From positions 62,001 through 126,000 of the IMG/VR virus record IMGVR_UViG_3300028800_000001: a stretch of DNA of 64,000 nt; one strand, written 5' to 3'. Position 1 is the stretch's first letter; each line of letters begins with the position of its first letter. Shown in pieces: positions 7,865-61,342 of the stretch. The notes below the pieces were generated by a model. It saw only the letters and a list, made by a program, of their open reading frames with translations, was not told the origin of the DNA and made no database searches. Position numbers and translations under genes: made by a program.

Positions 7865-7918
7865 AGCATAGCGTAAAATACAGAAAACGTCAAGCGTTTT
7901 TTCTCTGTATTTTCAGAA
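7865..7918 (-). promoter_or_regulatory. promoter module P1
   Basis: TTCTGAAAATAC...TTGACG-N17-TATGCT. Confidence 0.85.
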
Positions 7919-8498
7919 GATACTGGCGTACTCGGCACACGTCCTTTGGCGCAATAACCAGCAAAAGATCAGGATGACGATCCCTTTTCAAGCTATCGCA
8001 CTCGTCACAGGCCGGAACACAATTATCCCAGGTGGTGCCACCCCCTTTCGATATCGGAACGAAATGATCCATGCGTTTCCACGGTCGCCTTTGGCAATAG
8101 GCACACTGCTGTGCGAAGTAGTCCAGCGTTTCTCTCCACTCTGTGAGCGTCAAGGTTGCTGGCGTTCCAGCTTTGAGCGCACGTTGTCTTTGACGCTGAA
8201 TATACGCCTTTGACGCATGCATTGGGAGCGGCTCAAGTTCTTGCGGCTGTTCTTCTATCTCAGGCGTCAAGTTGGTAAGAAATTCGCTATAGACTTGTTG
8301 CTGGTAGAGCGAGGTTGCAGAGGAAAGCAGCGCATGCCCCTCTGCAACCAGATCACATTCTGGTCTTCGTAGTAGTTTTAGAAGGTATTCGTGTGCCTGA
8401 TATTTTTCAGAGAACGCAATGGAGGCGTCAGGATGTGCCTCCATGTAGCGTTTTCCCAGGCGCATGAGCCCTGTATAATAGGCAATCAACTCTTTCAT
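7890..8498 (-). CDS. HNH endonuclease
   Basis: CAYC, DHFVPISKGGGTTWDNCVPACDECD. Confidence 0.85.
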   Translation of the reverse strand: MKELIAYYTGLMRLGKRYMEAHPDASIAFSEKYQAHEYLLKLLRRPECDLVAEGHALLSSATSLYQQQVYSEFLTNLTPEIEEQPQELEPLPMHASKAYIQRQRQRALKAGTPATLTLTEWRETLDYFAQQCAYCQRRPWKRMDHFVPISKGGGTTWDNCVPACDECDSLKRDRHPDLLLVIAPKDVCRVRQYLLKIQRKNA

Positions 8499-9070
8499 TT
8501 TTTACTTTGTAAGTACGTTTGTACTCTCGCTAGATCATCTGCCGGAAGGCCAATGCCTTCACTGAGCAGCTTCACACCTTTCTCCTGATCACAATACGAA
8601 CAAGCTGGAACACAGTTGTCCCAGGCCGTTCCCCCACCACGCGTAATAGGGATAAAGTGTTCTAGACATTCCCACAGCGCACGCTGACAATACGCACAGC
8701 GGTGATGAAAGTATTCTAACGTCTCTTTCCATTGTTCAACAGTGAGAGTGGCAGCGCGCCCTGCACGCTTCGCACGCAAATTATGCCAGAGAATATAGGC
8801 ATCTACATCCGTATAACGCCCTCGCAGCAGCAAGAGTGATGGATTTTCAGCGCGTAGCGTCTCAAGAAAGGTAGTGTAGACATTTTTCTCTAATGACGAT
8901 TTTGCCTGAGAAAGAAGTCGCTCCCCTTCCATTTCCCAGGCGTCTTCGTTCTTCTTTAGAATGGTAAGGATGCTTGCATAAGCGTCTGCTTTTTGCTTGA
9001 GTACGCGATGACGCGTACTGTTTTGCAGCGCCACACCAAACAATTGCTCATAATGCGTATGCATATTCAT
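8495..9070 (-). CDS. HNH endonuclease, paralog of 7890-8498
   Basis: CAYC, EHFIPITRGGGTAWDNCVPACSYCD. Confidence 0.85.
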   Translation of the reverse strand: MNMHTHYEQLFGVALQNSTRHRVLKQKADAYASILTILKKNEDAWEMEGERLLSQAKSSLEKNVYTTFLETLRAENPSLLLLRGRYTDVDAYILWHNLRAKRAGRAATLTVEQWKETLEYFHHRCAYCQRALWECLEHFIPITRGGGTAWDNCVPACSYCDQEKGVKLLSEGIGLPADDLARVQTYLQSKK

Positions 9071-9077
9071 CTCTTAT

Positions 9078-9455
9078 TTATTCCTCTAACCAGAGCATGC
9101 CATCAGAATAGTAAAGCATATCCTTCGTTCTCGGCAGCAAGTAACAGTGAACATCCGCGCCAACTTTCCCTACTTCAGTGAGTGGGTTAAAACAATAATG
9201 CGTACAAAATTCGCTATCCATCCATGCGGTCACCATATTGTTGCGTAGCAATGAAGTGGGAACATTTTTATTTTGAAGGACACGAATGTCATACTCTCCT
9301 TCGGCAACAACCAGGATCTCAAATTCTTTTCCCCAGGTGCGCAACAGGCCACCAACTGCACTGTCAGCCGTAGCCGCACATTCCCAGCAACCAGGACGAC
9401 CATCAAAGTAGGCCATATAATCATCCTGTCTTTTTTGCACTCGAATAACGGTCAT
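9078..9455 (-). CDS. hypothetical protein, HicB-like N-terminus
   Basis: IRVQKRQDDYMAYFDGRPGCWECAATADSAV pattern. Confidence 0.6.
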   Translation of the reverse strand: MTVIRVQKRQDDYMAYFDGRPGCWECAATADSAVGGLLRTWGKEFEILVVAEGEYDIRVLQNKNVPTSLLRNNMVTAWMDSEFCTHYCFNPLTEVGKVGADVHCYLLPRTKDMLYYSDGMLWLEE

Positions 9456-10873
9456 TGTAATTCCTCCATCAGCAGCGCCATCAACGGAAAAGTAACCAGG
9501 AAACGTGAGCGCGACTGTTCTTCATCGCGCTTTACCAAAATGGCAAAGTTGGCTTTCGCCTGCCGTACCATTGGGCTGCTGTCAGAGAAACGTTCCAAGA
9601 CCTCCAACATGTCAGCATACGCGGCTTCTGTTTCCAGGCGAACGTAGAAACTTCCCTCCTTTTGAAGGTAGGGTGAGCAGGAGAAAAGCAAATCAGTAAG
9701 AAAACTCAGGTATTCTGCGTTGGTTGCCCCATAGTGGCGCGCATAGCGGTCGAAAAACGTTTGTTCATCCTCGTTGAGTAAAAGTACGGTTCCCTGCTCC
9801 ATATAGGCATAGACCTTTGGGAGTAAATGATCGCTCTTATAGATCTCAACATAGGTTGGCACATCACTGTAGTATGCTTTGCTCCATGGGATACTTTTCA
9901 TATCTACGTTGGCCCTTGCGCAGAGCGCCGCTGTACAGATCACGCTATTGCCGACGCCATACGGGTGCCCATCATCGTGATGCTCGAAGGCGATATTATA
10001 ACGCCATACAAAATGGCTGTGCCAGATATCTAGTGTGTAATAAATTGCGCTCTTGAGCAAATGAAACGAGCAGCAATGATTCATGCCATGAAACCAGAAC
10101 TTACAATTAGGAAGGCCACGCTGCCAGGGATCTGCATTTTCTATATGATGCACATAATCCGCAAAGTAGTCCTGCGGTGTGCTGTACTCCTGCGCAAGGT
10201 AGTGCTCAAGCAGTTTGACCATCGCATCATCATCAGGATGATCGTATTCCACCGGTTGATAGTGATCAGGCGTCTCATCAATTTCATTTTTGGTATGATT
10301 GTCAAAGTGCCCAATCTGATGCAGGTATTGCATGCGTGCTACACGTAGTAATCGGTGGCGTTCGCAGCATAGTAAGAAGGGGCGAAGCTCTGGAATGCAA
10401 TCAGCATAATAATGATCTTCGTTATAGGTAAGCGTAGAGTTGAGCCAATGACGATATTCATCAATGATCTCTTCTTTACTCGTTAAAAAGACGTGCCCAA
10501 CGTCACGGGCGGTAAAGTGGCGGTACTCTGCGTGTTGTGGTTCCAGACCAAGAATAAGCGCCTCGACAAAAGCCGCATCAAAAGACCAACTGATTGTGAA
10601 AAATTCGATGTCAGCAGAATAGCCAGAGACCATCGCCACCCGCCACTCTGAAGAAACGCCTTTGAATATTTTGGTGGGAAGACCACCTTGCATGTCGAGC
10701 GCTAAACGGAATTTGCGCTCATTGATCGGACGATGTGCCTCAATATGAAACATCACATCTTCATCCGAGATAGCAACCGCGTTGACCGTTTTCACATAAG
10801 GACGAATAGCCGTACAAAACTTCTTGGCGATAGTCATCACTTCGCCTTCGTATTTTCTGAGTGTGCTCATCAT
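9452..10873 (-). CDS. hypothetical protein (473 aa)
   Basis: Long ORF, AAAGGA SD. Confidence 0.85.
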   Translation of the reverse strand: MMSTLRKYEGEVMTIAKKFCTAIRPYVKTVNAVAISDEDVMFHIEAHRPINERKFRLALDMQGGLPTKIFKGVSSEWRVAMVSGYSADIEFFTISWSFDAAFVEALILGLEPQHAEYRHFTARDVGHVFLTSKEEIIDEYRHWLNSTLTYNEDHYYADCIPELRPFLLCCERHRLLRVARMQYLHQIGHFDNHTKNEIDETPDHYQPVEYDHPDDDAMVKLLEHYLAQEYSTPQDYFADYVHHIENADPWQRGLPNCKFWFHGMNHCCSFHLLKSAIYYTLDIWHSHFVWRYNIAFEHHDDGHPYGVGNSVICTAALCARANVDMKSIPWSKAYYSDVPTYVEIYKSDHLLPKVYAYMEQGTVLLLNEDEQTFFDRYARHYGATNAEYLSFLTDLLFSCSPYLQKEGSFYVRLETEAAYADMLEVLERFSDSSPMVRQAKANFAILVKRDEEQSRSRFLVTFPLMALLMEELQ

Positions 10874-10895
10874 TTTCCTTTCTAAAAAATGATTG

Positions 10896-10926
10896 AAAAA
10901 AAAGGAGCGCCGTACTTGACGCCCCC
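10896..10926 (-). terminator. intrinsic terminator
   Basis: GGGGGCGTC/GGCGCTCC stem followed by T8. Confidence 0.7.
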
Positions 10927-10928
10927 TC

Positions 10929-11060
10929 TTACCGACGCTCTTCTTGGCGTCGTTTCTCGCGCTCTTTTTCGCGTGCGCGCCGCTCTCGATCTAGCTCTGC
11001 AAACGTCTTGCCTACTTGTTCTGCTTTCTTGAGGTTCTGTATTGCCAGAAATGCATTCAT
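10929..11060 (-). CDS. small charged protein (43 aa, not in ORF track)
   Basis: MNAFLAIQNLKKAEQ...RR; ATGA overlap; followed by terminator. Confidence 0.55.
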   Translation of the reverse strand: MNAFLAIQNLKKAEQVGKTFAELDRERRAREKEREKRRQEERR

Positions 11061-11275: not shown

Positions 11276-11330
11276 AGTATAGGAAGTTTTTGGAGCCCCG
11301 TCAAGCGTTTCTTCTTTGTATTTTCAGAAA
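11276..11330 (-). promoter_or_regulatory. promoter module P2
   Basis: TTTCTGAAAATAC...TTGACG-N17-TATACT. Confidence 0.85.
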
Positions 11331-14277: not shown

Positions 14278-14309
14278 ACGCCCTCCTTTCTTTTTGAATT
14301 AATTATTTT

Positions 14310-14855
14310 TTAATTATTTCGTGGCTTTACTTTTTTAAAATTAATTAATTCTTGCACTTCTATGAAACGCCAGCGCAACCAGAGCACTGAGGCAACGTCC
14401 CATCCCCATAATCCTTCCGGTTCACTGTACTCTGTCGCATAAATACCCTTCCAGGTGACCGCAATACCGTCAAGACCAGCGCGTGCTGCTGCTTCAAAAT
14501 CAATCTTCTTTACATGAGGATCATAGCACTTCTTTAGTGGATAGGTTTGGGTCAGAAAGTGCAAATGCTCCTGGCTCTCAACGGTGTAGACACGTGCCTG
14601 CGGATCTGGCGTGAGTAACCAGAAACGCGCTAGACGCAGCGTGTTCAACTCATTTTCCTGCATATATTCTACCCAGGAAGAGGTCTCACGCGCTGCGTCA
14701 TATGGGGCTGTCCAAATTCCCCCTCTTGGCTTATTCAAAAAGCCATAACGATCATTTTCAATGGGCGCAAATAATTCAGGGATCACCTGCGCCATTGTTT
14801 TACTAACAAAGAGCTGCGGCTGGTTCCACATGCTCCTGGCTCTTTCGATAGGCAT
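14310..14855 (-). CDS. conserved phage protein (NKPxGGxWT family)
   Basis: NKPRGGIWTAP, IDFE, DGI, GWDVAS motifs. Confidence 0.8.
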   Translation of the reverse strand: MPIERARSMWNQPQLFVSKTMAQVIPELFAPIENDRYGFLNKPRGGIWTAPYDAARETSSWVEYMQENELNTLRLARFWLLTPDPQARVYTVESQEHLHFLTQTYPLKKCYDPHVKKIDFEAAARAGLDGIAVTWKGIYATEYSEPEGLWGWDVASVLWLRWRFIEVQELINFKKVKPRNN

Positions 14856-27867: not shown

Positions 27868-27922
27868 ATGATACGTCATTCAAGGAGAAACGTCAAGTGT
27901 TTTTTCTATGAATATTCAGAAA
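27868..27922 (-). promoter_or_regulatory. promoter module P6
   Basis: TTTCTGAATATTC...TTGACG-N17-TATCAT. Confidence 0.8.
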
Positions 27923-28689: not shown

Positions 28690-28744
28690 ATTATAGCGCA
28701 GCTTTTTAGCGAAGACAAGTATTTCTTCTATAGATATTCAGAAA
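28690..28744 (-). promoter_or_regulatory. promoter module P7
   Basis: TTTCTGAATATC...TTGTCT-N17-TATAAT. Confidence 0.8.
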
Positions 28745-34107: not shown

Positions 34108-34162
34108 AGTATAGGCCATTTCTCACAGAACGTCAAGAATATTTTCATAGTATTTTCAGAAA
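34108..34162 (-). promoter_or_regulatory. promoter module P8
   Basis: TTTCTGAAAATAC...TTGACG-N17-TATACT. Confidence 0.85.
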
Positions 34163-35079: not shown

Positions 35080-35210
35080 AGTTTCCTTCTAAAAATTTCT
35101 CTTTCTTTTCAGAAACTATGCCATAAGATCACGCTTTTGTCAAGAGATTTCGCTCATGCTTATTTTGCGAAGCGTAAGCGACGAATGGTATCAGATTTGC
35201 CTAAAGTAAG

Positions 35211-39268: not shown

Positions 39269-39323
39269 AGTATAGGTCGAAATAAAAAAGAAGTCAAGCA
39301 TTTTTTCTCTGTATTTTCAGAAA
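39269..39323 (-). promoter_or_regulatory. promoter module P9
   Basis: TTTCTGAAAATAC...TTGACT-N17-TATACT. Confidence 0.85.
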
Positions 39324-42730: not shown

Positions 42731-42785
42731 ATTATACGGCAGGAAACACGAAAAGACAAGCGTTTTTTCTATGAATATTCAGAAA
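42731..42785 (-). promoter_or_regulatory. promoter module P10
   Basis: TTTCTGAATATTC...TTGTCT-N17-TATAAT. Confidence 0.8.
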
Positions 42786-45656: not shown

Positions 45657-45711
45657 AGCATAGCCGGTTGCAAGAAGAAAGTCAATATATTTTTCTATGT
45701 ATTTTCAGAAA
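45657..45711 (-). promoter_or_regulatory. promoter module P11
   Basis: TTTCTGAAAATAC...TTGACT-N17-TATGCT. Confidence 0.85.
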
Positions 45712-48647: not shown

Positions 48648-48703
48648 TGCTTTGACCTTTAAGAATACAGACGTAAAAGATGGGGAAATATCAAATGAGG
48701 GTG

Positions 48704-49051: not shown

Positions 49052-49111
49052 ACAATTGCGGCAAGGAAACCCTGTGCTTTTAAGCCAGGGAGGAATTGCC
49101 GTCTCTCCTCT

Positions 49112-50645: not shown

Positions 50646-50672
50646 ACTTCTTCTGACTGCGCGCCCCTGCCA

Positions 50673-51149: not shown

Positions 51150-51150
51150 G

Positions 51151-51905: not shown

Positions 51906-51913
51906 ATCACCTC

Positions 51914-52705
51914 CTATAAGAAGATATTACCGTTGTCGTCTTTGTAGGCCACAAAGCCATCATCCAGCATCTTGCGCCACTCTTCTTTGGTGGCTTTGAA
52001 GCTCCCAAAGGTCGTGCTATGAACTGCGCACCATGCGCAAAGCTCATCTAACGTGGCGAAAACAGGTGAACAAGGAGAACCTTCCGTGGTATCTTCCCAG
52101 AGCTGATACCCCTCACCTGTTGGCGGCTCTTCGGCTTCCCAGTTCTCGTAGCGTTCTTTATGTTCGGGCGTTGGAAACTGCGATCCATCGCCGCCACACT
52201 CAGGGCACAAATCGCTCTTGCCTTCACGTGCAAGTTTGGCTTTGATCACCGTGTGGCAATTAATGCTATCGTGTCCAATACCAATCTTTGCCCAATCATT
52301 GACCTCTTGAGGTGTTGGAATATATCCGTTCGTCTCTTTGAGCCAATAAGAGCTTTCCCCGCTCTTTTCCTGCTCTCGCAGCATTTCCCATTGTTCGTCT
52401 GTACGTGGGCGTCTGGTAAAATCGAAAAGCCTTCCATCATCAACAAGCGCTTGAATGTCGTCTTCGTCCAGGTGGTAGCACCACGCTTCGTCATTGTAGC
52501 GATACCCTTTTTCAATATACACCCAACGCGTGCGATCAAAGCCATGCCAACGATCACGCAGCGCTTTGCATTCAAGGCTCCACCCTTCGCCATCGCAGGC
52601 AGGACAATTGTACTCAGAGCTCCAATACTGATTAAGATACCCTTCCCAGGTCGTGTTTTGCGGCCAATCGAAATCCATCGGTACGCGTTTTAATAATCTT
52701 CCCAA
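51914..52705 (-). CDS. conserved phage protein with split DnaJ-like CxxCxGxG pair
   Basis: MGR..KRVPMDFDWP, CPACDGEG, CPECGGDG, GYQLWEDTTEGSPCSPVF. Confidence 0.8.
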   Translation of the reverse strand: MGRLLKRVPMDFDWPQNTTWEGYLNQYWSSEYNCPACDGEGWSLECKALRDRWHGFDRTRWVYIEKGYRYNDEAWCYHLDEDDIQALVDDGRLFDFTRRPRTDEQWEMLREQEKSGESSYWLKETNGYIPTPQEVNDWAKIGIGHDSINCHTVIKAKLAREGKSDLCPECGGDGSQFPTPEHKERYENWEAEEPPTGEGYQLWEDTTEGSPCSPVFATLDELCAWCAVHSTTFGSFKATKEEWRKMLDDGFVAYKDDNGNIFL

Positions 52706-52707
52706 AT

Positions 52708-52950
52708 TTATTCCTCAATTCGCAGTTTTGCAAGCGGAAATTTGACCGCTTCAAATTCGGTGGCAGTACAGATAAGTTCTGTCCCAATCTTTGCAAGTTC
52801 AACTTGTATGGCGTTTAAGCGTGGTGAATTTGTGCGCTCACCAGTAAGCCAGAGGTTGAGCGCTTCGTCAATGAGCGCATTGCGCTTACGCCAGTGGATA
52901 AAGGGAAAAAGCAACATTGTACCTCTCTTGAAAGCTATAAGTGGTCGCAT
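52708..52950 (-). CDS. hypothetical protein
   Basis: ORF tiling. Confidence 0.55.
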   Translation of the reverse strand: MRPLIAFKRGTMLLFPFIHWRKRNALIDEALNLWLTGERTNSPRLNAIQVELAKIGTELICTATEFEAVKFPLAKLRIEE

Positions 52951-53107
52951 ACGCTACACCATCGTTTTCCCAGGTGCCTGAAAGTTGTGCAACACCTGTG
53001 AGCGCTTGCTCTTTGGCATCTTCATCTTGTGAAAGCCAGAACAAGCGCGGAAACTTCTCGTAAAAATCGTGTACGAGCAAACTGAGTCCATGAAGTTCGC
53101 TATCCAT
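52886..53107 (-). CDS. hypothetical protein
   Basis: AAGGAGG SD before MDSELH. Confidence 0.6.
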   Translation of the reverse strand: MDSELHGLSLLVHDFYEKFPRLFWLSQDEDAKEQALTGVAQLSGTWENDGVAYATTYSFQERYNVAFSLYPLA

Positions 53108-53744
53108 TATATAATCCTCCTTCTTTACGTACTTGATTGCAGATGCAATCCCAAAACGGTGCGCCGTAATCCTCCGGCTCGTAGGCAACCCCACTACGCC
53201 AGGAACACTGACTACACCCGACATACTCCATGTCGTTCTCTACCTCCTCTACCAACGTCTTCGTTAGACACCAGGGGCAAAGGCTATAGAGGAGGCACGC
53301 TGTGCATTCGTTTTCATCCCATTCATCGCCGTAGCTGCTTTTCTCATATAAAATGCCTGTGCCACGACAGGTACGGCAATAATTGGGATGCGCGGCCTCA
53401 AAAGCCACTACTTCCTCCTTGCCATCCTGACATCCCTGGAGATGCTTCGCACATTCAATATCCATGCGAAAAGGAAACTCAAAGTGAACAGGAAGGTTAT
53501 AGCGCAGTGCAACCGCAACACAGTCATCCAGGTCACGCTCATCTCTGTTCACATCGCGCAGAAATTGTCGAATAAGTGCTGCGCGAGCACGTGTAAGCGT
53601 CTGATACGGAATTGCGACCCCCTCTTTTCGGTAGATGTACCAGACCTCCTGGCACGAGAAAAAGAGGTAATAGCACTGCGTAGGCGGATGATAAAAGGCA
53701 CGCCAGACCTCCGCCCACTCTCGAAACGCGACACCAATACTCAC
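53100..53744 (-). CDS. Cys-rich hypothetical protein
   Basis: CRTCRGTG, CTAC, CPWC, CSQC. Confidence 0.75.
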   Translation of the reverse strand: MSIGVAFREWAEVWRAFYHPPTQCYYLFFSCQEVWYIYRKEGVAIPYQTLTRARAALIRQFLRDVNRDERDLDDCVAVALRYNLPVHFEFPFRMDIECAKHLQGCQDGKEEVVAFEAAHPNYCRTCRGTGILYEKSSYGDEWDENECTACLLYSLCPWCLTKTLVEEVENDMEYVGCSQCSWRSGVAYEPEDYGAPFWDCICNQVRKEGGLYNG

Positions 53745-54133
53745 AGTTTTTCAATCCTGACGGCGTTCTCTGGAATACGCAGTTCACCATGCTTTTCCGA
53801 GAAGACAATAAGATAGCCGCGCTCCAGCAGCACGCCAGAAAGTGTCATCTGCTTGTCTGCGCGAATGAACAACGCCTTTCCTTCTGGCTTATGAAAGCTG
53901 ATGTCACGCAAGAAAGTCACCGTATGTGCGCCATCGGTATAATCAGGATCAACACACAGATGCCGGTCGTCTGGATGAATAAAGGAAAGGGACATCTCCC
54001 AATTCTCTTTGATATGCTCCACACCAGGATTGGTTGGAAGTAATCGCAGCGAAGCGCGCCTGCCACGTGTGAAAAGAAGTTCACAACGACGATAACGACC
54101 AGAGATTTTTGCGCGTACAATAGTGCTTTCCAT
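53741..54133 (-). CDS. hypothetical protein
   Basis: TTCAAGGAG leader, first gene after P13. Confidence 0.75.
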   Translation of the reverse strand: MESTIVRAKISGRYRRCELLFTRGRRASLRLLPTNPGVEHIKENWEMSLSFIHPDDRHLCVDPDYTDGAHTVTFLRDISFHKPEGKALFIRADKQMTLSGVLLERGYLIVFSEKHGELRIPENAVRIEKL

Positions 54134-54170
54134 TTTTTCTTTCTCCTTGAAAAATATATTTCTTTTCTAT

Positions 54171-54225
54171 AGTATAGGGCATTTACACTAACGCGTCAAG
54201 AATATTTTCACTGTATTTTCAGAAA
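54171..54225 (-). promoter_or_regulatory. promoter module P13
   Basis: TATTTTCTGAAAATAC...TTGACG-N17-TATACT. Confidence 0.85.
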
Positions 54226-54278
54226 ATAAAAAGAGAGAAGCGTTATGCCCCTCTCTTAATAAAACCCTTTCGGGGTTA
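54222..54278 (-). terminator. tandem hairpins/terminator abutting P13
   Basis: AACCC-CGAAA-GGGTT and AAGAGAGGGGC/GCTTCTCTCTT then TTTATTTT. Confidence 0.7.
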
Positions 54279-54992
54279 TTTAACTTCTTTGGCTTTCATA
54301 TCAAAATATGCGCCTGCTCGATAATATTTGCGCTCATCTTGTGCCTTTAAGAATTTCTCGTAGACCTCTTTGGCCTTTTGATACGACGTTGCCTCGATCA
54401 TCTGCTCTTCAAATTCCGGCTGCTTTTCGATAAAACAACGGAAGGTTTTGACCGGCTTTGGCGCTTTTTTGACGCGTGGGGTGGAAACCGTCTTTGGGGC
54501 TGGAATGGTGCGTCCTTCGCCAGCAGCGCGTGCCCATTCTACAACGCGCTGTTCCATCTCGACCAGATCCGCTTTTGCGAACCGGATGTTTCGCTCGTAT
54601 TCGTTAATCTTACCGCTGTGCGCGTATTCGTAGGTTCTTGGCATTCCAGAGGAGACGCGGTATCCGTAGCTCTTCGTGTCCAGGTCGGCTGGACGGTCGC
54701 ACACAATCTCTTTCCCTGACTGATAAGCGGATTTGTTAATCCACACGGAAAGCTGTGCAGGAGGATTGGCGACGAACTCTGCGAGTGCCTGTTCTTGAGC
54801 CGCGATGAAGTTTTTTACCACTTCGACAATCTCTTTTAAACGATCACAGGAGACCTGATACGGGACGTAACGCGCACCAGCGCAAGAAGCGGTCTGCCAT
54901 CCATACCCAGGACGGCTGTATCCGTGATGTGCAATCAGTCCACTCGCGGCGCGTACCGCTCTTCCGCATACCTGACAGGTTAACTTTTCCAT
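54276..54992 (-). CDS. conserved phage protein with N-terminal Zn-binding motif
   Basis: TCQVCGR..IAHHGY.RPG.GWQTASC.G. Confidence 0.8.
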   Translation of the reverse strand: MEKLTCQVCGRAVRAASGLIAHHGYSRPGYGWQTASCAGARYVPYQVSCDRLKEIVEVVKNFIAAQEQALAEFVANPPAQLSVWINKSAYQSGKEIVCDRPADLDTKSYGYRVSSGMPRTYEYAHSGKINEYERNIRFAKADLVEMEQRVVEWARAAGEGRTIPAPKTVSTPRVKKAPKPVKTFRCFIEKQPEFEEQMIEATSYQKAKEVYEKFLKAQDERKYYRAGAYFDMKAKEVK

Positions 54993-55038
54993 TTTCTTTC
55001 TCCTTGAATGTTTTTTTTCGTTTATTTCTTATACAGGA

Positions 55039-55093
55039 ATGATAGCGCATTCAGGGAGTGGCGTCAAGTGTTTTCTCTATGAGTTTTCAGAAA
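55039..55093 (-). promoter_or_regulatory. promoter module P14
   Basis: TTTCTGAAAACTC...TTGACG-N17-TATCAT; near copy of P6 and its leader. Confidence 0.8.
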
Positions 55094-55307
55094 GTGTCTC
55101 AACAACAGATTCAGCCCATGCCTCCTGGCAGGCAACGCAGTTCCAGCCACGCGGAGTATTGTTCCAACCGAGCACTTTAAGGATTTTACTTCCCTCTTCT
55201 ACGGTGAGTCTTCCTCCACGCTGAAAGACGGTCTGCGGTTTATCACACTCAAAACAAAAGGCAGTGAGCGAATGGGTAAAGGTTCCTGTATGAAATTTAT
55301 CTTTCAT
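55077..55307 (-). CDS. small zinc-finger-like protein
   Basis: CFEC...GWNCVAC; stop inside P14. Confidence 0.7.
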   Translation of the reverse strand: MKDKFHTGTFTHSLTAFCFECDKPQTVFQRGGRLTVEEGSKILKVLGWNNTPRGWNCVACQEAWAESVVETLSENS

Positions 55308-55668
55308 GTTTTTTCTCTTCTTTCACTAATTCATCAATGTCTGCGCCAAACATGCTGATCTCTTCGTACAAATACTCCAGCGTGTTGTCATATTCTTCTC
55401 TCAGGATAGCCGCAATAAGCGTCTCACGATTTGCTTTCACGAGAGACGGTTGTTCCTCCGTTTGATAACACACGCCAAGTTGCTTCGTTCGCTGTACCAG
55501 TGCTGCCCTACGCCATTTACGCAGCTCACTCAAACGTGAAACGCGTGCCACACATCTTGCGCTATATTCGAGCGTGAGGGTGACCAGACGAACGTAGCGC
55601 GTGCGTAGCACCTCTGGACTCTCGATGAGATCAAGATCACACTCACGATACGCCTCATAGTCAAACAT
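55297..55668 (-). CDS. hypothetical protein
   Basis: ORF tiling. Confidence 0.7.
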   Translation of the reverse strand: MFDYEAYRECDLDLIESPEVLRTRYVRLVTLTLEYSARCVARVSRLSELRKWRRAALVQRTKQLGVCYQTEEQPSLVKANRETLIAAILREEYDNTLEYLYEEISMFGADIDELVKEEKKHER

Positions 55669-55671
55669 CTC

Positions 55672-55971
55672 TTAATACCTCCAGGTATCGCTATTGTAGC
55701 ACGCCGCATGCAGAGGAAGGTGGTTGAGAAGTTCGCAGTGCCCGTTGTCCAGGTCGTGCGCTGAAGGGCAATTGGAAAAATCGCCATCACGGTGTTTTTG
55801 TTCGTCGGTGACTTTGGAAAGATCGGCAAAAATGTGATCTGGATGTAGATCTGCTGGACACGTCCAGACCGGCCCATCACCATCTTGCTCGCTCTCGTAG
55901 ACCAGTTGACCACAAGCAGGACAAATCCCAAGCGGCTCTTCTATGAGAATACCCTCTTCGTTTCGTTGCAT
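55672..55971 (-). CDS. Cys/His-rich hypothetical protein
   Basis: CPACG, WTCP, LPLHAAC; AAAGGA SD. Confidence 0.7.
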   Translation of the reverse strand: MQRNEEGILIEEPLGICPACGQLVYESEQDGDGPVWTCPADLHPDHIFADLSKVTDEQKHRDGDFSNCPSAHDLDNGHCELLNHLPLHAACYNSDTWRY

Positions 55972-55987
55972 AGTTCGTTCCTTTCAT

Positions 55988-56017
55988 AAAAATGCGGTAG
56001 GTTTTTGCCCCTACCGC
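55988..56017 (-). terminator. intrinsic terminator
   Basis: GCGGTAGG/CCTACCGC then ATTTTT. Confidence 0.65.
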
Positions 56018-56035
56018 TTGTTTGTTTTTTGGTTT

Positions 56036-56212
56036 CTAGCGCACACACTTCTTCACGATAAAACGAAAGCTATAAAAAAGAAGAGGTGCGACGACCAAAA
56101 TAATTGGGATAATCACAGTGCTGTCCAGATGTGTTCGCGTTGCCAGAAGAATAATAACAGGCGTCATGGCGAGAAAGGTGCTTCCGCCAGCGACATTGTT
56201 CAGATCAATCAT
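56036..56212 (-). CDS. small membrane protein
   Basis: TTCAAGGAG leader, first gene after P15. Confidence 0.7.
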   Translation of the reverse strand: MIDLNNVAGGSTFLAMTPVIILLATRTHLDSTVIIPIILVVAPLLFYSFRFIVKKCVR

Positions 56213-56249
56213 TTTCTTGCTCCTTGAATATTTTTCTTTCAATACAGCA

Positions 56250-56303
56250 AGTATAGAGCACATCTGCGTAAAAGACAAGTGTTTTTTCTATGTATTTTCA
56301 GAA
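56250..56303 (-). promoter_or_regulatory. promoter module P15
   Basis: TTCTGAAAATAC...TTGTCT-N17-TATACT. Confidence 0.8.
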
Positions 56304-56494
56304 CGCCTGAGTAAAGCCGTAATAGCGCGGCGTGAATAGCCTTGCTTGAGTAGAAACCGCTTGAGTGCCCGTGGACGTTGCATCAGTTGCTCTATTGCAC
56401 AGAAGAGACAAATGCCATGCGACGTGGCTGGATCAAAAAAGGGGGTTGTTGAAACAATGGGCGTCACTTCGTCGTGCCATGCACACGTAGTCAT
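56288..56494 (-). CDS. small zinc-finger-like protein
   Basis: CAWH...SHGICLFC; stop inside P15. Confidence 0.7.
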   Translation of the reverse strand: MTTCAWHDEVTPIVSTTPFFDPATSHGICLFCAIEQLMQRPRALKRFLLKQGYSRRAITALLRRSENT

Positions 56495-56506
56495 AAAGAA
56501 ACCTCC

Positions 56507-56541
56507 AAAAAGAAAACAACCCCAAAGTCGAGGTTGTTTTC
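56507..56541 (-). terminator. intrinsic terminator
   Basis: GAAAACAACC/GGTTGTTTTC then TTTTT. Confidence 0.7.
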
Positions 56542-56564
56542 ACGCGCAGGCACAGTTCTATGCG

Positions 56565-56765
56565 TCAGGGGCGTCTCTTTGCTCGTTCTCGTTCAAGACT
56601 AACAAGGTTATTCTCCGTTTTCGCAAGCTCGATGCGCTTACGCGCTGAGCGAACCATACCTGCAAAGTAACTCATTCCTAGTTCTTCATAATACTTTTCG
56701 AGCGCAAGTGCCTGCGCAATCTTTTGGTCTCTTTGTGCATTTGTTATTCTTTGTGCATTTGGCAT
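56565..56765 (-). CDS. hypothetical protein
   Basis: ORF tiling. Confidence 0.65.
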   Translation of the reverse strand: MPNAQRITNAQRDQKIAQALALEKYYEELGMSYFAGMVRSARKRIELAKTENNLVSLERERAKRRP

Positions 56766-56767
56766 TG

Positions 56768-57208
56768 TTACAGTTTCTCCTCATTGTCTACTCGCACACA
56801 ATTGACACCAGCCGCTTCAAGATATGCCTGCTGCGTTGGAAAGCCAAGTAAAGATATGCGAATATCATTATACGCTTTTTCGTAGTATACCATACTTATT
56901 CCAAAATTAATAAGGTGCTGGCAACAATGGACGCAAGGTGCGTGCGTACAATACAAAAAAGCGTCTCCCGTGTGCGGCCCCGCGAAAAGCAATGCGTTTG
57001 TTTCCGCATGCACACAGCGAATACAATGCCCATCATGCACCAGACAATTGTCCTGGGTGCAATGCGCCAGATGACGTGGCGCACCATTAAAACCGGTTGA
57101 AAGAATACGATCCTGTGCCACCAGGAGTGCGCCCACCTGCGCACGCTGACAGGTGGAACGCTGCGCAACACTGCGCGCCAAAGAAAGGTAATACGCGTGC
57201 CTATTCAT
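56768..57208 (-). CDS. dCMP deaminase (ComEB-like)
   Basis: RSTC.RAQVGA, TGFNGAP, HAETNA, APCVHC. Confidence 0.92.
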   Translation of the reverse strand: MNRHAYYLSLARSVAQRSTCQRAQVGALLVAQDRILSTGFNGAPRHLAHCTQDNCLVHDGHCIRCVHAETNALLFAGPHTGDAFLYCTHAPCVHCCQHLINFGISMVYYEKAYNDIRISLLGFPTQQAYLEAAGVNCVRVDNEEKL

Positions 57209-57783
57209 GCCGCTACCTCTTCGCATTCTTGATAAAGCAGATATTTACTTTGTGTGCGCTTGAGCATATTGAACACGGTCACCTGGGAGTACTTCTTCTC
57301 AAAACGTTTCGAAAGCGCTTTGGCGCACTCCGCTTGCGTACAATCAGGATGCTTCATACGGTAGACAATGAGGAAGTACTCATCGCGTTTCACCGTCGTC
57401 AAAAAGTGTTTGAACGTCTCCATAAATTCGATAGTTTCAAACGCGTCTTCTTCGTCTTGAAGCCACTCCTGGGCTCCTCCAAATTCTTCGCCTTCGACAA
57501 AGTCTACGCCACTTTCTTGCCCCTCTTGCAAAAGCGTTAAGCTCTCAATGCGTGACTGCTGATACTCTTCACCAATATAGGTGTTCATACGATTTTGAAT
57601 AGCGCGTATCGCATACGCAGCGAAGCCATTGCCCCGCTCTGGTTTATAGGTTCTCTCTGCCTCTACCAACGTAAGCGCGGCAACGGCCTCCAGATCTTGA
57701 TAATCATAGAGGCCGTTATATTTTTCTACATAGCGCTGGGCATGTTTACGAGCAAGAGGAAGATATTGTTCCGATAGTCTCAT
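57205..57783 (-). CDS. phage sigma70-family RNA polymerase sigma factor
   Basis: Region 2 YQDLEAVAALTLVEAERTYKPERGNGFAAYAIRAIQN; region 4-like TQAECAKAL..SQVTV. Confidence 0.8.
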   Translation of the reverse strand: MRLSEQYLPLARKHAQRYVEKYNGLYDYQDLEAVAALTLVEAERTYKPERGNGFAAYAIRAIQNRMNTYIGEEYQQSRIESLTLLQEGQESGVDFVEGEEFGGAQEWLQDEEDAFETIEFMETFKHFLTTVKRDEYFLIVYRMKHPDCTQAECAKALSKRFEKKYSQVTVFNMLKRTQSKYLLYQECEEVAA

Positions 57784-57843
57784 TCTATTCTCCAGAAAAA
57801 AAGTAATGGGCGTTTTTTCAAGGAACACCCGAAACCTGATGAG

Positions 57844-58416
57844 TTATTTTTTCTTATAAAGAGCATTTACCGTGTCGCGCATGCGGTCTGCACGAGAACG
57901 ATTACGTGACTCAATCTCAAGCGCGGCCTCCACCACATTCAACTGTACCAAGCTTTGCATTTGTAATTTTGGTGCATTTGGTTCATCGATACTGGCCCCA
58001 CTTGGCGTCATAATCTGATACTTGCACGCTTCGTAGAGATTGGCAATAATAATTTGCCCAAAGGTTCGATAGAGCTCGTCAACAAGAGCATCCTTGAGTT
58101 GCGGCATTGCCGTGAGTAGTGTTGAAGTTCCTACCAACATACTTTTGAGCATGTCTCCCTTTGCCTGGGAAAGCGCAACATACCATTGCCAACGCGCCTC
58201 GCTGGAGCTTAGGAACACCACGCGCATCATTTGCGTCACTTCGTGGTTATAGTGGATGCCCTGCATATGCATCACGCTAATCTCCTGGGCACGAGTGCTA
58301 AAGTTATTCATCACAGTACAATAAACATCATCATCTTCGTCAACGTGGCGATAGCAGGTGATGCCGCCAAGCACCACCGGCTCCACCATCAACTTATGTG
58401 GACAGGGAAATTGCAT
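57844..58416 (-). CDS. hypothetical protein, paralog of 39342-39806
   Basis: LKDALVDELYRTFGQIIIANLYEACKY...PKLQMQSL. Confidence 0.8.
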   Translation of the reverse strand: MQFPCPHKLMVEPVVLGGITCYRHVDEDDDVYCTVMNNFSTRAQEISVMHMQGIHYNHEVTQMMRVVFLSSSEARWQWYVALSQAKGDMLKSMLVGTSTLLTAMPQLKDALVDELYRTFGQIIIANLYEACKYQIMTPSGASIDEPNAPKLQMQSLVQLNVVEAALEIESRNRSRADRMRDTVNALYKKK

Positions 58417-58430
58417 CGTTGTTCTCCTTA

Positions 58431-59969
58431 TTAATAGCGCTCACGCAATCGCACTACTGTCTGATAGAGCACCTCTGTGATCTCCTCAATCTTGCAGTAA
58501 TACGCCCTACGACCAAGAATTTCCCGATTCCCTGAGAGATCATGTTCATAACCCGTCAAGTAAATGACCAGGACTTCATCAATATTTTGCTCCTCAATGA
58601 GTCGGTCGGCAAGCACTTTCGCCTTGTTACGATCCGCAAAGCCACCATCAGTGAGGATACACAATATCTTTTGCGCATGTCCAAAGTCAGCGGTTTCCAG
58701 TATTTCCATTGCTTTTGCGATTTGTGTGCCACCGTCCGTATACGGATAGAGCAAACTTTCCATCAACAGTTCATCTGGTAGTTTTACCACCTTTGCGCTG
58801 TCAGCAAAGTCAATTTGAGCGCTGCGCACCAGAGGAATATCCGTGAGCGCTGCATGAAGCATCACGCACGCCTCTGCGTATTCGTTCATATCATCACACG
58901 TGGAGTCAGAAACGTCGCGCACAATCCACATGGTGAGCGCTGGAACAATGCGTCGTGGCTCTGTGAAACTGGGCTCCTCATCATCACTAAAGGAACCAGC
59001 ATACGCTTCGACAAGATCGGCAATCTCACCGCAATCATCACGCGTGCGCGCCTCATCCCATCCTTCGCGTGTCTGGCGGAAAATGGTATGTAGTTCTTGA
59101 ATTTCTTGAGCGCGCTTCGTAATTGTTTGGCGACAAAAGGCGTTGGTCTTGTCTTCTAGCGTCAGATCATGATCGCTTTGTCCAATTTCCTTTGCTTTTT
59201 CTTTGCTTTCCGCTGTGTCGTTAACTTGCTCAACGAGCTCACGAATACCACTGTCAGCAACGCTCTGACCTTCGAGCACCTGCTCAATTTCTTCGTCTCC
59301 AATGCCGACCTTGACGACTTTTCCACTCCTCAAGCTCTTTTGGAGCTCTGCATCGCTATCGCATGCTTCCAAAATCCACAGATAAATCGGGGTGCAAGAT
59401 TCTAACAGGTTTTGTCGTTCATTCACAATTGCACTAAGCGTATAAGGAAGGAAGAACGAAACAAAATTCATGTCGTCTACTTTTTCGTCAATGACACCAA
59501 AGCGTGTCACACGAAAAAGCGTTTGTAAGAGCGCAATGACCTTGCTCTTCGTTTTTTCATCGCTTGATTTAATGCCTTCAAGCGTTGGTTTAATAGAGGC
59601 TAGTGTCCAGCGTAGCGGCCCCGCGTGCGCAGGATAATCATACCAGAGGCTATTTTCGATCCTGCTGTCGTCAATAACATTGTCAATGTAGTGAAAGAGC
59701 CCATCGTCAAAGCTCTTTACACCAGAGAAACTTTCCGAGCGGATGTGGCAGACTTCATGGGTGAGAAACCCCAGGCTGTAGTACTCCAGAGAAACAAAAT
59801 CATGTACCCACGACTCTTCATAGTGCTTTTTAATTTGCGCATCATTGAGTGTAATAAGATAGTCCTGCCCTTTGGGCTGTACCCAGGCAATATCTTTATT
59901 GTCAGGTCGCCAGATGTGCTTTATTTCGACGCTATGCTCCGGTATCAATTGTAATGGCTGAAAAGGCAT
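58431..59969 (-). CDS. VWA-domain protein with N-terminal HExxH (CobT-like)
   Basis: THEVCH, NVIDDSRIE, MIDAS DVSDS, GGT, LTDG. Confidence 0.85.
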   Translation of the reverse strand: MPFQPLQLIPEHSVEIKHIWRPDNKDIAWVQPKGQDYLITLNDAQIKKHYEESWVHDFVSLEYYSLGFLTHEVCHIRSESFSGVKSFDDGLFHYIDNVIDDSRIENSLWYDYPAHAGPLRWTLASIKPTLEGIKSSDEKTKSKVIALLQTLFRVTRFGVIDEKVDDMNFVSFFLPYTLSAIVNERQNLLESCTPIYLWILEACDSDAELQKSLRSGKVVKVGIGDEEIEQVLEGQSVADSGIRELVEQVNDTAESKEKAKEIGQSDHDLTLEDKTNAFCRQTITKRAQEIQELHTIFRQTREGWDEARTRDDCGEIADLVEAYAGSFSDDEEPSFTEPRRIVPALTMWIVRDVSDSTCDDMNEYAEACVMLHAALTDIPLVRSAQIDFADSAKVVKLPDELLMESLLYPYTDGGTQIAKAMEILETADFGHAQKILCILTDGGFADRNKAKVLADRLIEEQNIDEVLVIYLTGYEHDLSGNREILGRRAYYCKIEEITEVLYQTVVRLRERY

Positions 59970-60009
59970 AAGAATACACCTCCTTTTTGAGATGATTTTA
60001 AATGTAAGA

Positions 60010-60061
60010 GAGACAAACGCGTAAGGAGTGCAACGATGAGTATTTGGTACGCGTTTGTCTC
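60010..60061 (-). ncRNA. candidate stem-loop sRNA/leader with anti-RBS/anti-AUG loop
   Basis: 14-bp perfect stem starting at P16 predicted +1; 24-nt loop complementary to AGGAGTGCAACGATGAGTATTTGG. Confidence 0.45.
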
Positions 60062-60065
60062 CTTC

Positions 60066-60117
60066 AGTATACCTGCTTTCGCAAGAAATGTCAATAAATT
60101 TCTAAGTATTTTCAGAA
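60066..60117 (-). promoter_or_regulatory. promoter module P16
   Basis: TTCTGAAAATAC...TTGACA-N17-TATACT (upstream box 2 bp closer). Confidence 0.8.
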
Positions 60118-60118
60118 C

Positions 60119-61237
60119 TTACCAGAGTTTGCCTGCCAATTCATCTTTTACCGTTCGTCCGTGGACGCCTTGTCCGTCAATCGGCATGCCATGCCCTACA
60201 CTTGCCAAAATTTCGTTACGCACCTTTTGGCCGCCAATATAGCTGACGTATTTCTTCATCTCAATAACGCGTGGATCAGCCAGTTCATTACGAGACACGG
60301 CAGGGTTGTCACCATACATATAATCGTAGAGCCGTTTTGTAAGCGGAGCGACAGCCACCCCTGGCCCTTCGAATACATCATCCATCTTAATTGTTTTGGG
60401 ATCAAACGGAGTACGCTTATTCTTAAAGACGTAAGCGACCTGGGCACGTACAAGTGCCTGACTCATGTTACGAATGGAAAGCGGGTAACTCTCGGTACGT
60501 GCGGCGCGTACATAGCCGGTGACCAGACGTGCAAAACTTTCAGGAACGCTGAAGGGTTTGGGATTCCATACCTTCGGTGGATCGAGTGCCGCCCATTCTT
60601 CGCTCTTGAAGATTTGGCCGCGCTCGTACTTGTCAGAGGCCATCTGGATTGCAACAGCAAGCTCTGTCTCATAAAGCGGATAATCAAAGTTGTACGGATA
60701 GAAACGCTGGCCTGTGCTTTGTGGGATTTTGATATTGCCGACATGCTTGTCGTCATTACTACAAAACATGATGCGGAAGTACTTATTCGCTTCAACGAAC
60801 ATGTCACCGGTCGCTGTCACACTGTCCTCATCCAATACGGTGTTGTACATCGTAATGCCGGAAGCATCTCGTGCATGCGTAAGCTCGTCAATGATGACAG
60901 CCGCGCCTTCGCTCATCGCCGTCGCGACGATACCGAGCACATCTTGCGTGCTGCCAGCAATCAGACGGGTACCAGCAATCGCTTTCGTTTTGGTAACCTC
61001 TGGACTATTTTGAAAGTAGTAAAGATTGCAGCCTACGCGCTCACAATATTTCGCCATAACGAGCTTGGCGAAGTGTGTTTTGCCGGAGCCAGAGGGGCCA
61101 ATAAGATAGGGCACAAAGCCCATATAAATGAGCTCCAATATTTCTTCAGCCCGTTCTAAAAGGTCAACGCCGGTAATGCCCCGCTCCTTAATTTTTACTA
61201 AATCAAGCGGGGTGAACTTCTCTGCGGTAATAACCAT
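60119..61237 (-). CDS. MoxR/CobS-family AAA+ ATPase
   Basis: Walker A GPSGSGKT, Walker B IIDE, FCSN, RF; adjacent to VWA gene. Confidence 0.88.
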   Translation of the reverse strand: MVITAEKFTPLDLVKIKERGITGVDLLERAEEILELIYMGFVPYLIGPSGSGKTHFAKLVMAKYCERVGCNLYYFQNSPEVTKTKAIAGTRLIAGSTQDVLGIVATAMSEGAAVIIDELTHARDASGITMYNTVLDEDSVTATGDMFVEANKYFRIMFCSNDDKHVGNIKIPQSTGQRFYPYNFDYPLYETELAVAIQMASDKYERGQIFKSEEWAALDPPKVWNPKPFSVPESFARLVTGYVRAARTESYPLSIRNMSQALVRAQVAYVFKNKRTPFDPKTIKMDDVFEGPGVAVAPLTKRLYDYMYGDNPAVSRNELADPRVIEMKKYVSYIGGQKVRNEILASVGHGMPIDGQGVHGRTVKDELAGKLW

Positions 61238-61287
61238 GTAATTTTCTCTTTTCTTATTAAAATTTTTCAGGAACGCTGAACTTTATA

Positions 61288-61342
61288 ATAATAGCGCACA
61301 TCTTTGAAAGAAGTCAAGCATTTTTTCACTGTATTTTCAGAA
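61288..61342 (-). promoter_or_regulatory. promoter module P17
   Basis: TTCTGAAAATAC...TTGACT-N18-TATTAT. Confidence 0.75.

What the first reader, a model, noticed from the sequence alone, without database searches (positions are those of the whole stretch)
7865..61342. 17-copy promoter module with a fixed-position palindromic upstream box organises the whole region
Seen: minus-strand consensus TTTCTGAAAATAC-A-rich-CTTGAC(N)-N17-TATACT starting at 7865, 11276, 15251, 19577, 24851, 27868, 28690, 34108, 39269, 42731, 45657, 48593, 54171, 55039, 56250, 60066 and 61288. The box TTTC-W-GAAA is palindromic (TATTTTC-A-GAAAATA at 54214-54228) and sits 13 bp from the CTTGAC in all but P16. Degenerate candidates lie at 35107-35171 and 62901-62957. 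Established: -35/-10 match host primary sigma; fixed upstream elements act as UP or activator sites. Inference: an early regulon read by a dimeric factor or by alpha-CTD.
Basis: partly seen in the sequence, partly recalled or inferred. Interest (0 to 1): 0.75.

Follow-up and report, generated by a model that had tools for sequence, protein, structure and literature searches.

The report
Jumbo-phage promoter family with upstream box
The repeated module is real: it is the standard host-polymerase promoter of an uncultured 327-kb phage, used at least 52 times, and its 13-bp upstream box is conserved in distant relatives, but nothing here shows what reads the box.

Summary
All 17 sites exist as described. 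A fixed-geometry pattern finds 15 of them against 0.00 expected by chance. The window is part of a complete 327,295-bp jumbo phage from rhizosphere metagenomes, probably infecting a Gram-positive Bacillota host. The module is genome-wide: at least 52 copies, each pointing the same way as the gene behind it.

Its layout is box TTTCTGAAAATAC (-61 to -49), an A-tract with an invariant G (-45 to -39), CTTGAC, a 17-nt spacer, TATACT, a leader of about 37 nt, then a strong AAGGAGA ribosome-binding site. The spacer and flanks are unconserved. The box core TTTC-W-GAAAAT survives in relatives whose adjacent protein is only 35-57% identical, including a 33% GC lineage, so it is under selection.

One module drives the operon holding the phage's only sigma factor. 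That fits an early class read by host polymerase, but no RNA data were available.

My best reading (about 0.4) is a two-part UP-like element at the alpha-CTD positions. The invariant, symmetric C and G fit that poorly. They keep a dimeric reader alive: host CodY (11 contiguous consensus positions match) or a phage factor. Some copies are terminator-promoter cassettes copied as units.

This is a new variant of the known extended phage early promoter, of moderate interest.

The parts
7865..7919 (-). Promoter module P1 (box, A-tract, CTTGAC, N17, TATGCT)
11276..11330 (-). Promoter module P2
15251..15305 (-). Promoter module P3
19577..19631 (-). Promoter module P4
24851..24905 (-). Promoter module P5 (leader sub-family i)
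27868..27922 (-). Promoter module P6 (variant box TTTCTGAATATTC; leader sub-family i)
28690..28744 (-). Promoter module P7. Hybrid type: CTTGTC -35, with the -10 overlapping TAATTAATTTTA; terminator hairpin abuts the box. It drives an HD_4 hydrolase gene.
34108..34162 (-). Promoter module P8, with a terminator hairpin directly upstream
39269..39323 (-). Promoter module P9 (best match to the family matrix)
42731..42785 (-). Promoter module P10 (variant box, hybrid type). The terminator at 42795-42822 abuts it.
45657..45711 (-). Promoter module P11
48593..48647 (-). Promoter module P12
54171..54225 (-). Promoter module P13. The terminator at 54231-54257 abuts it. This copy has the full 15-nt palindrome.
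55039..55093 (-). Promoter module P14 (leader sub-family i)
56250..56304 (-). Promoter module P15 (CTTGTC -35)
60066..60118 (-). Promoter module P16 (11-nt linker). It drives the operon of the 512-aa protein, a 190-aa protein, the sigma factor and dCMP deaminase. The orthologous promoter is conserved in relatives.
61288..61343 (-). Promoter module P17 (18-nt spacer, TATTAT -10), upstream of the AAA_5 ATPase gene
57205..57828 (-). The phage's only sigma-70-family gene, lying in the P16 operon
   Evidence: synteny
35107..35171 (-).
62901..62957 (-).
14297..14351 (-). Stand-alone copy of the second repeated element (AATTAATTAATTTT, about 20 nt, AAAAAATAATTAATT) just before a ribosome-binding site

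Best explanation
The module is the standard promoter that this jumbo phage offers to its host's primary-sigma RNA polymerase. It probably serves the early class.

Shown:
- A near-consensus -35 (cTTGACg), a 17-nt spacer and a TATACT -10 lie a median of 44 nt before a start codon with a strong ribosome-binding site, always pointing with the gene.
- Nearly every strong core promoter in the genome carries the upstream part.
- The upstream part is under selection.

Inferred mechanism: the upstream 26 bp act as a two-part UP-type element. Two phased tracts, WGAAAAWA, lie 11 bp apart and are centred near -53.5 and -42. The two alpha-CTDs of the polymerase dock on them, which makes every phage promoter outcompete host promoters without any phage protein. 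One such promoter expresses the phage sigma factor, which would then take over a second promoter class.

The units are also copied as cassettes of about 100 bp, some with a terminator fused upstream.

Rough odds: host-polymerase promoters 0.9; the upstream part is a positive, position-dependent element 0.75; direct alpha-CTD reading of the whole element 0.4.
For: Geometry and excess over chance.

Information profile: box and A-tract carry 1.3-1.9 bits per position, while the -35/-10 spacer and the upstream flank carry 0.0-0.2. G at -45 is 46/46 and C at -36 is 41/46, although neither was used to select the sites.

Gene context: median 44 nt from -10 to start codon, all co-directional.

Phylogenetic footprint: homologues of the 512-aa gene at 57, 56 and 35% identity keep only box, AGAAA, TTGAC and TATAnT in the orthologous intergenic region. 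Thirteen further modules occur in relatives, including two contigs of 33-35% GC.

Position: alpha-CTD-dependent B. subtilis promoters have AT-rich blocks centred at -43 and -53 (PMC4495994). The rrnB P1 UP element begins AGAAAAT (PMC3035448). T4 early promoters are UP/-35/TGn/-10 promoters with extra consensus regions (PMC2988021).

Flexible tether: linkers of 11, 12 and 13 nt all occur, and two promoters have the box abutting the -35.

Early class: the sigma gene lies behind P16, and promoter-proximal genes are mostly ORFans.
Against: Alpha-CTD reads A/T minor grooves. It is not known to need the C and G that are invariant here (65 of 65 modules, including AT-rich relatives) and that lie symmetrically about the central W.

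The distal half matches the E. coli distal UP consensus at only about 5 of 11 positions (my alignment, from memory of Estrem 1998).

No transcription start sites, no host and no biochemistry are available, so both 'early' and 'activating' are inferences.
Confidence: 0.4

Rival explanations
1. The box is an operator for the host nutrient sensor CodY, a dimeric winged-helix protein that senses GTP and branched-chain amino acids. CodY bound at about -57 would raise or gate all host-polymerase transcription of the phage according to host nutrition. Alternatively, the many copies would soak up CodY.
For: The clade-wide core TTTCWGAAAAT equals 11 contiguous positions of the CodY consensus AATTTTCWGAAAATT (PMC9318921; PMC5314169).

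Conservation falls off symmetrically over four positions on each arm.

The C and G are kept in every module, including relatives of 33-35% GC, where GAAAATT itself appears.

CodY specificity is conserved across Bacillota, and CodY activates some promoters (PMC5314169).

The host is probably Gram-positive Bacillota.

The phage carries an HD_4 (RelA/SpoT-type hydrolase) gene behind module P7. Such an enzyme could keep GTP high. This link is speculative.
Against: The 52 boxes have 2-6 mismatches to the 15-nt consensus, most often 4.

The outer left arm (AAT) is not conserved at all. The conserved A and C at the right end, and the A-tract, lie outside the CodY consensus.

CodY is mostly a repressor.

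The host is unknown. No binding test was possible, because the complex job was not folded.
Confidence: 0.2
2. The box is the site of another sequence-specific protein conserved within this phage clade, or of another host factor. One possibility is an injected or early phage protein that boosts early promoters, or later shuts them off by blocking the UP position.
For: The same base-specific signature as above.

The box is conserved across lineages of very different GC content, and so perhaps of different hosts. A phage-borne reader would explain that simply.

The strict module was found in none of 185,579 bacterial species genomes, so it is a phage-specific signature.

The divergent promoter at genome 309995(+) shares the box of 309961(-), with the palindrome centre 10 bp closer, on the same helical face.
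Against: No candidate protein was identified. The genes behind the modules are ORFans with no recognisable DNA-binding domain. An activator needed at every host-type promoter would have to be injected with the DNA.
Confidence: 0.2
3. The upstream box is conserved mainly because the modules are mobile promoter-terminator cassettes, like T4 PeSLs. They would spread and homogenise by recombination, so the box would serve as recombination homology rather than act in transcription.
For: Module copies share 76-86% identity over 93-120 nt, including spacer and leader. Sub-families show linked variants: TTTCTGAATATTC goes with CTTGTC, and one leader sequence recurs about 12 times.

About 10 of 52 modules have a terminator hairpin fused to the box.

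The promoter before the AAA_5 gene is present in this genome and in L090 but absent in L092.

PeSLs are described in PMC4122927.
Against: Across sub-families, and in relatives at 35% protein identity, only the functional blocks stay conserved while spacer and flanks drift. Copying alone cannot produce that pattern. Fixed distance and orientation relative to the -35 are a transcriptional signature.
Confidence: 0.1

Closest known systems
T4 early promoters (UP/-35/TGn/-10 with extra consensus regions; PMC2988021)
   Same: Dozens of copies in one large lytic phage. They are read by unmodified host primary-sigma polymerase, have near-consensus core elements plus conserved upstream A/T-rich blocks at the alpha-CTD positions, and drive small early genes.
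   Different: There is no canonical TGn here. The distal block is a 13-bp box with invariant C and G in a palindromic core. The host is probably Gram-positive. No Alt-like enzyme was looked for.
PeSL (promoter-early stem-loop) cassettes of T4-like phages (PMC2839356, PMC4122927)
   Same: Short composite terminator-plus-early-promoter units are repeated through regions of variable small genes, with copies homologous over about 100 bp.
   Different: Only about a fifth of the modules carry the hairpin. A role in gene shuffling is not shown here: one gain or loss was seen among relatives.
UP elements of E. coli rrnB P1 and of B. subtilis and phi29 promoters (PMC7822876, PMC4495994)
   Same: Position -60 to -38, two A/T blocks centred near -53 and -43, and an AGAAAAT-like start.
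   Different: UP elements are degenerate A/T tracts. Here 13 + 11 bp are almost invariant and include G/C positions.
CodY box AATTTTCWGAAAATT of Bacillota (PMC9318921, PMC5314169)
   Same: The core TTTCWGAAAAT is identical, and the centre is palindromic.
   Different: The outer left arm is missing, the last position differs, and conserved extra bases lie to the right. The site is at -57 of about 52 phage promoters rather than overlapping host promoters as a repressor site.
phiEco32-type scheme (host sigma for early genes, phage sigma later; PMC8948821, title and abstract only)
   Same: The phage encodes its own sigma-70-family protein and also has host-type promoters.
   Different: Temporal classes were not measured here, and the promoter read by the phage sigma is unknown.

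Membership tests
Primary-sigma (sigma-70/sigma-A) promoter | -35 TTGACA-like and -10 TATAAT-like hexamers 17 +/- 1 nt apart | tested here: met
   TTGAC or TTGTC is 46/46 and TAtAcT is conserved. The spacer is 17 in nearly all, and 16 or 18 in a few.
Primary-sigma (sigma-70/sigma-A) promoter | Lies upstream of, and points with, a gene | tested here: met
   Of the 52 modules, 49 have a co-directional ORF with a ribosome-binding site downstream; the median is 44 nt from -10 to start codon. At least one of the other three precedes an RNA-like hit.
Primary-sigma (sigma-70/sigma-A) promoter | Transcripts start about 7 nt after the -10 | not testable with these tools
   No RNA run could be listed. 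The DNA runs hold the phage only at low depth.
UP element | A/T-rich blocks at the proximal (about -43) and distal (about -53) alpha-CTD positions | tested here: met
   A-tracts lie at -44 to -39 and -55 to -52. The positions follow PMC4495994.
UP element | Match to the consensus sub-sites (proximal AAAAAARNR; distal AWWWWWTTTTT; consensus recalled from memory) | tested here: inconclusive
   The proximal site fits (AAAA at -44 to -41). The distal site fits at about 5 of 11 positions and contains invariant C and G.
UP element | Stimulation depends on the alpha-CTD | not testable with these tools
   This needs in vitro transcription with alpha-CTD-less polymerase.
CodY box | Close match to the 15-nt palindrome AATTTTCWGAAAATT | tested here: inconclusive
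   Eleven contiguous positions are identical in the consensus. Individual boxes have 2-6 mismatches: 7 have 2, 11 have 3, 24 have 4, 7 have 5 and 3 have 6.
CodY box | Both 7-nt arms conserved | tested here: not met
   The left arm is conserved only for TTTC; positions further out carry about 0.1 bit.
CodY box | The host has CodY and CodY binds the site | not testable with these tools
   The host is unknown, probably Bacillota. The phage has no CodY helix-turn-helix. The complex job was not folded.
PeSL-type mobile promoter cassette | Terminator stem-loop fused to an early promoter | tested here: inconclusive
   About 10 of 52 modules have a convincing hairpin plus T-run running into the box. 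The rest have none.
PeSL-type mobile promoter cassette | Copies lie at insertion, deletion or replacement boundaries between related genomes | tested here: inconclusive
   Only one case was seen, the promoter before AAA_5 (present here and in L090, absent in L092). The relatives are short contigs.

The most novel reading that the evidence does not exclude
Every host-polymerase promoter of a whole clade of uncultured jumbo phages carries a CodY-type operator centred at -57. Phage early transcription would then be gated by the host's GTP and branched-chain amino-acid sensor, or the phage's many copies would titrate CodY and derepress the host's nutrient-scavenging genes. An early phage (p)ppGpp-hydrolase-like enzyme would help keep the signal on.
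Probability: 0.15. Interest if true: 0.75.

Novelty: new variant of a known kind. Interest (0 to 1): 0.45.

Why it matters
Large lytic phages win the competition for host polymerase with extended early promoters. The T4 review read here notes that their extra regions of consensus remain only partly understood (PMC2988021).

Here a clade of uncultured jumbo phages shows an unusually sharp case: a 13-bp box with base-specific, partly palindromic conservation at the distal alpha-CTD position of essentially every host-type promoter.

If alpha-CTD reads it, the box defines an optimal upstream element for a Gram-positive polymerase and a compact, strong, portable promoter-leader-RBS cassette. If CodY or a phage protein reads it, it would be a genome-wide switch tying phage early expression to host physiology or to the phage's own timing.

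Either way, the motif is a practical marker for annotating transcription units and for recognising members of this phage clade in metagenomes.

Tried and rejected
**RNA evidence.** No RNA run could be listed for a promoter-proximal gene, so start sites and timing could not be checked.

**Population variation.** Four DNA runs with partial word shares were laid on 54150-60149. They hold the same phage at low depth as short, near-identical contigs. The apparent variants at 55036-55061 come from other module copies mapping there. This gave no usable polymorphism test.

**Host search.**
- The strict module pattern had 0 hits in 185,579 bacterial species genomes.
- The portal N-terminus found no relatives in those genomes.
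- The host stays inferred only from similarities of the portal and endolysin to phages of Gram-positive bacteria. Terminase and DnaE similarities were uninformative.

**Viral collection.** It holds only fragments of the same phage (L008-L010, 99.9-100% identical) and one 6.7-kb relative (L077, 76% nucleotide identity) without a module.

**Metagenome pattern hits outside the clade.** A conserved promoter in a 60-65% GC gut organism, a bacterial lon-region contig (L124), and several coding-region hits were judged single or chance occurrences.

**CodY winged-helix plus box DNA.** The complex job was counted but not folded. It is no evidence either way.

**Rejected readings.**
- Chance.
- A replication or packaging repeat: the fixed distance and orientation to the -35 and to genes argue against it.
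- Conservation by recent copying alone.
- A phage-borne CodY.
Full report
**What the window is.** The window is bases 62001-126000 of a single 327,295-bp contig with 46.6% GC. The virus collection classes it as complete, with direct terminal repeats; I measured a 127-bp repeat.

It is a tailed jumbo phage. It encodes a portal with an intein, an S78 prohead protease, a tape-measure protein, a large terminase, a DnaE-type polymerase, a Ro60/TROVE protein, two RNA ligases, a polynucleotide kinase-phosphatase and HNH nucleases. It also has 11 tRNA genes.

It comes from rhizosphere metagenomes and has no close cultured relative. The host is unknown. The portal is closest to phages of Parageobacillus, Bacillus and Geobacillus. 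An Amidase_2 endolysin-like protein matches only phages of Gram-positive bacteria. Ribosome-binding sites are strong AAGGAGA. A Bacillota host is therefore likely but not shown.

- All 17 sites are present at the stated coordinates on the minus strand.
- The 13-nt box with up to two mismatches occurs 33 times against 4.8 expected.
- A pattern that fixes box, GAA, TTGWC and TANNNT at their distances finds 15 of the 17 against 0.00 expected.
- The other two differ in spacing only: P16 has an 11-nt linker and P17 an 18-nt spacer.
- A generic sigma-70 scan of 42001-62000 recovers all eight modules there; they are six of its eight best hits.

**The family is genome-wide.** Scanning the whole genome with a matrix built from the -35 and -10 regions alone gives 93 candidates. 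Of these, 52 carry the box in register, and nearly every strong core promoter is among them. In 46 of 50 seed copies the box ends exactly 13 nt before TTG, and in four it ends 11 nt before. Forty-four lie on the minus strand and the rest on the plus strand. Each points with the downstream gene, a median of 44 nt from the -10 to the start codon. Thirty of the 52 lie in the first 126 kb, which is full of small genes of unknown function. Only four lie in the roughly 80-kb block with the structural genes.

**Anatomy.** Positions assume the T of TTGAC is -35.
- -61 to -49: box TTTCTGAAAATAC.
- -48 to -37: A n A G AAAAAA c n.
- Then C TTGAC g, a 17-nt spacer, TATACT, a leader of about 37 nt, and the ribosome-binding site.

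In the information profile, T-59, C-58, G-56, A-55 and A-52 are 46/46. G-45 (46/46) and C-36 (41/46) are equally fixed, although they played no part in choosing the sites. The spacer and the DNA upstream of the box carry almost no information.

Conservation falls off symmetrically around the central W for four positions: 72/78%, 91/98%, 100/100% and 100/100%. It then continues on the right only (A, T, A, C). G-56 and G-45 are 11 bp apart, so the element also reads as two phased units, WGAAAAWA.

**Sub-families.** A variant box TTTCTGAATATTC (8-9 copies) is linked with CTTGTC at the -35. About 12 copies share one leader (GTATAAGAAATAAACGAAAA...TTCAAGGAG) and similar spacers. Copies are 76-86% identical over about 100 nt. 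The modules have therefore been copied as cassettes. About ten have an intrinsic terminator hairpin whose T-run flows into the box.

**The box is under selection.** The 512-aa protein behind P16 has homologues at 57, 56 and 35% identity. They lie on contigs with the same gene order: AAA_5 ATPase, this gene, a ~190-aa gene, a sigma factor in the two closer relatives (that gene carries no family hit on L092), then dCMP deaminase. In the orthologous intergenic region only TTCTGAA.A.AC, AGAAA, TTGAC and TATA.T are invariant, and everything else has drifted. One metagenome scan for the module found further relatives. Together the relatives supply 13 more modules, including five from two contigs of 33-35% GC from the same metagenome (L092, L107). 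There the core TTTC-W-GAAAAT is kept, although the second G is not. The C and G of the core are present in all 65 modules. The strict module occurs in none of 185,579 bacterial species genomes, so it is a signature of this phage clade.

**What it does.** Identification as promoters for the host's primary-sigma polymerase is secure on sequence grounds.

An early class is likely:
- The phage's only sigma-70-family gene (57205-57828) lies behind P16, so host polymerase must transcribe it first.
- The first genes behind the modules are mostly ORFans.
- A different AT-rich element precedes at least the tape-measure gene and is spread through the 140-290 kb region.

No RNA data could be found, so this remains inference.

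**Who reads the upstream part.** It occupies the classical UP-element interval. Its A-tracts are centred at about -53.5 and -42. These are the positions of the AT-rich blocks in alpha-CTD-dependent B. subtilis promoters (PMC4495994) and of the alpha-CTD contacts on rrnB P1 (PMC7822876). The rrnB P1 UP element also begins AGAAAAT (PMC3035448). Linkers of 11-13 nt are tolerated, as expected for a flexibly tethered domain.

T4 early promoters are the obvious precedent. They are UP/-35/TGn/-10 promoters with unexplained extra consensus (PMC2988021). I therefore favour direct alpha-CTD reading, at about 0.4.

The weak point is the invariant, symmetric C/G pair, which A/T minor-groove reading does not explain. 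The core equals 11 contiguous positions of the CodY consensus AATTTTCWGAAAATT (PMC9318921; PMC5314169). I estimate the chance of such a match to some known Bacillota regulator motif at a few per cent. However, the boxes have 2-6 mismatches to the full 15-mer, most often 4. The outer left arm is unconserved, and conserved bases lie outside the CodY motif. I give CodY about 0.2, and another reader (phage-borne or host) about 0.2.

Copying as PeSL-like cassettes (PMC4122927) clearly happens, but it cannot by itself explain the footprint.

**Verdict.** The finding is real and larger than reported. It is best filed as a new variant of the known extended phage early promoter. One feature, the base-specific palindromic core at -57 conserved across a clade, deserves an experiment. 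Interest is moderate.

Noticed in passing
window 14297-14351, 28644-28693, 42684-42734, 62960-62980; genome-wide about 16-27 copies (e.g. genome 15008/15054, 33670/33703, 140534, 151087/151137, 175536-175591, 190879/190923, 220949, 239837/239870, 250582, 275149/275191, 280769, 289189): A second repeated element: AATTAATTAATTTT(A)AAAAA, about 20 nt, then AAAAAATAATTAATT, placed just before ribosome-binding sites. One copy directly precedes the tape-measure gene. In four hybrid promoters (window P7 and P10; genome 264413 and 302976) its first half overlaps the -10 (TATAATTAATTTTAG). It also occurs in relatives (L090, L092, L107). It may be the promoter or operator class of the phage sigma, or a paired protein site or AT-rich hairpin.
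   Followed up: partly
genome 235,200-237,050 (locus L136, about 9200-11050): A roughly 1.8-kb stretch packed with dozens of TAATTA(ATT) and GATACC repeats on both strands. It could be an origin, a partition site or a protein-binding array.
   Followed up: no
window 57205-57828 (-): The phage's only sigma-70-family gene. It is divergent and closest to the ECF, SigB/F/G and FliA models, all below their cut-offs. It lies in an operon with a 512-aa ORFan, a 190-aa ORFan and a ComEB-like dCMP deaminase, and this gene order is conserved in relatives.
   Followed up: partly
window 27909-28625 (-): A gene with an HD_4 (RelA/SpoT-type hydrolase) domain (E 6e-8, above the cut-off), behind hybrid promoter P7. 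It could be a small alarmone hydrolase, either for counter-defence or for keeping host GTP high.
   Followed up: partly
locus L004 18970-19083 (-) = genome 204970-205083; Ro60 gene at genome 202750-204669: A full-length but sub-threshold match to the Y-RNA-like family YrlA (30.7 bits, E 7.6e-4, gathering score 69). It lies between box promoter 205274 and the phage Ro60/TROVE-vWA gene. This suggests a phage Ro60 and Y-RNA pair driven by a module.
   Followed up: partly
window 59975-60060 (-); L090 6020-6075; L092 6040-6075: The leader of P16 contains a stem-loop in this phage and in both relatives, with different sequences. The 5' hairpin is conserved in structure, not in sequence.
   Followed up: no
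genome 43012 and 43501 (-) (locus L134 about 3012 and 3501): Two paralogous promoters in which the box directly abuts TTGACT (no A-tract), with a TGn-type extended -10 (TGCTAGAAT). Their downstream products were not identified; no Rfam hit lies nearby.
   Followed up: partly
genome 309961 (-) / 309995 (+): A divergent pair of perfect core promoters share one box. On the plus strand the palindrome centre lies at -47, 10 bp closer than usual, and transcription would run antisense to the endolysin-like gene region.
   Followed up: no
genome 199486-202383 and 289231-291855: Inteins interrupt the portal gene and a DEAD/ResIII helicase gene.
   Followed up: no
genome 206,435-215,344 (-): A cluster of 11 tRNA genes (Gly, Lys, 3 x Pro, Val, Trp, Gln, Phe, Glu, His) lies downstream of box promoters 216145 and 216747 and around 209867.
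   Followed up: no
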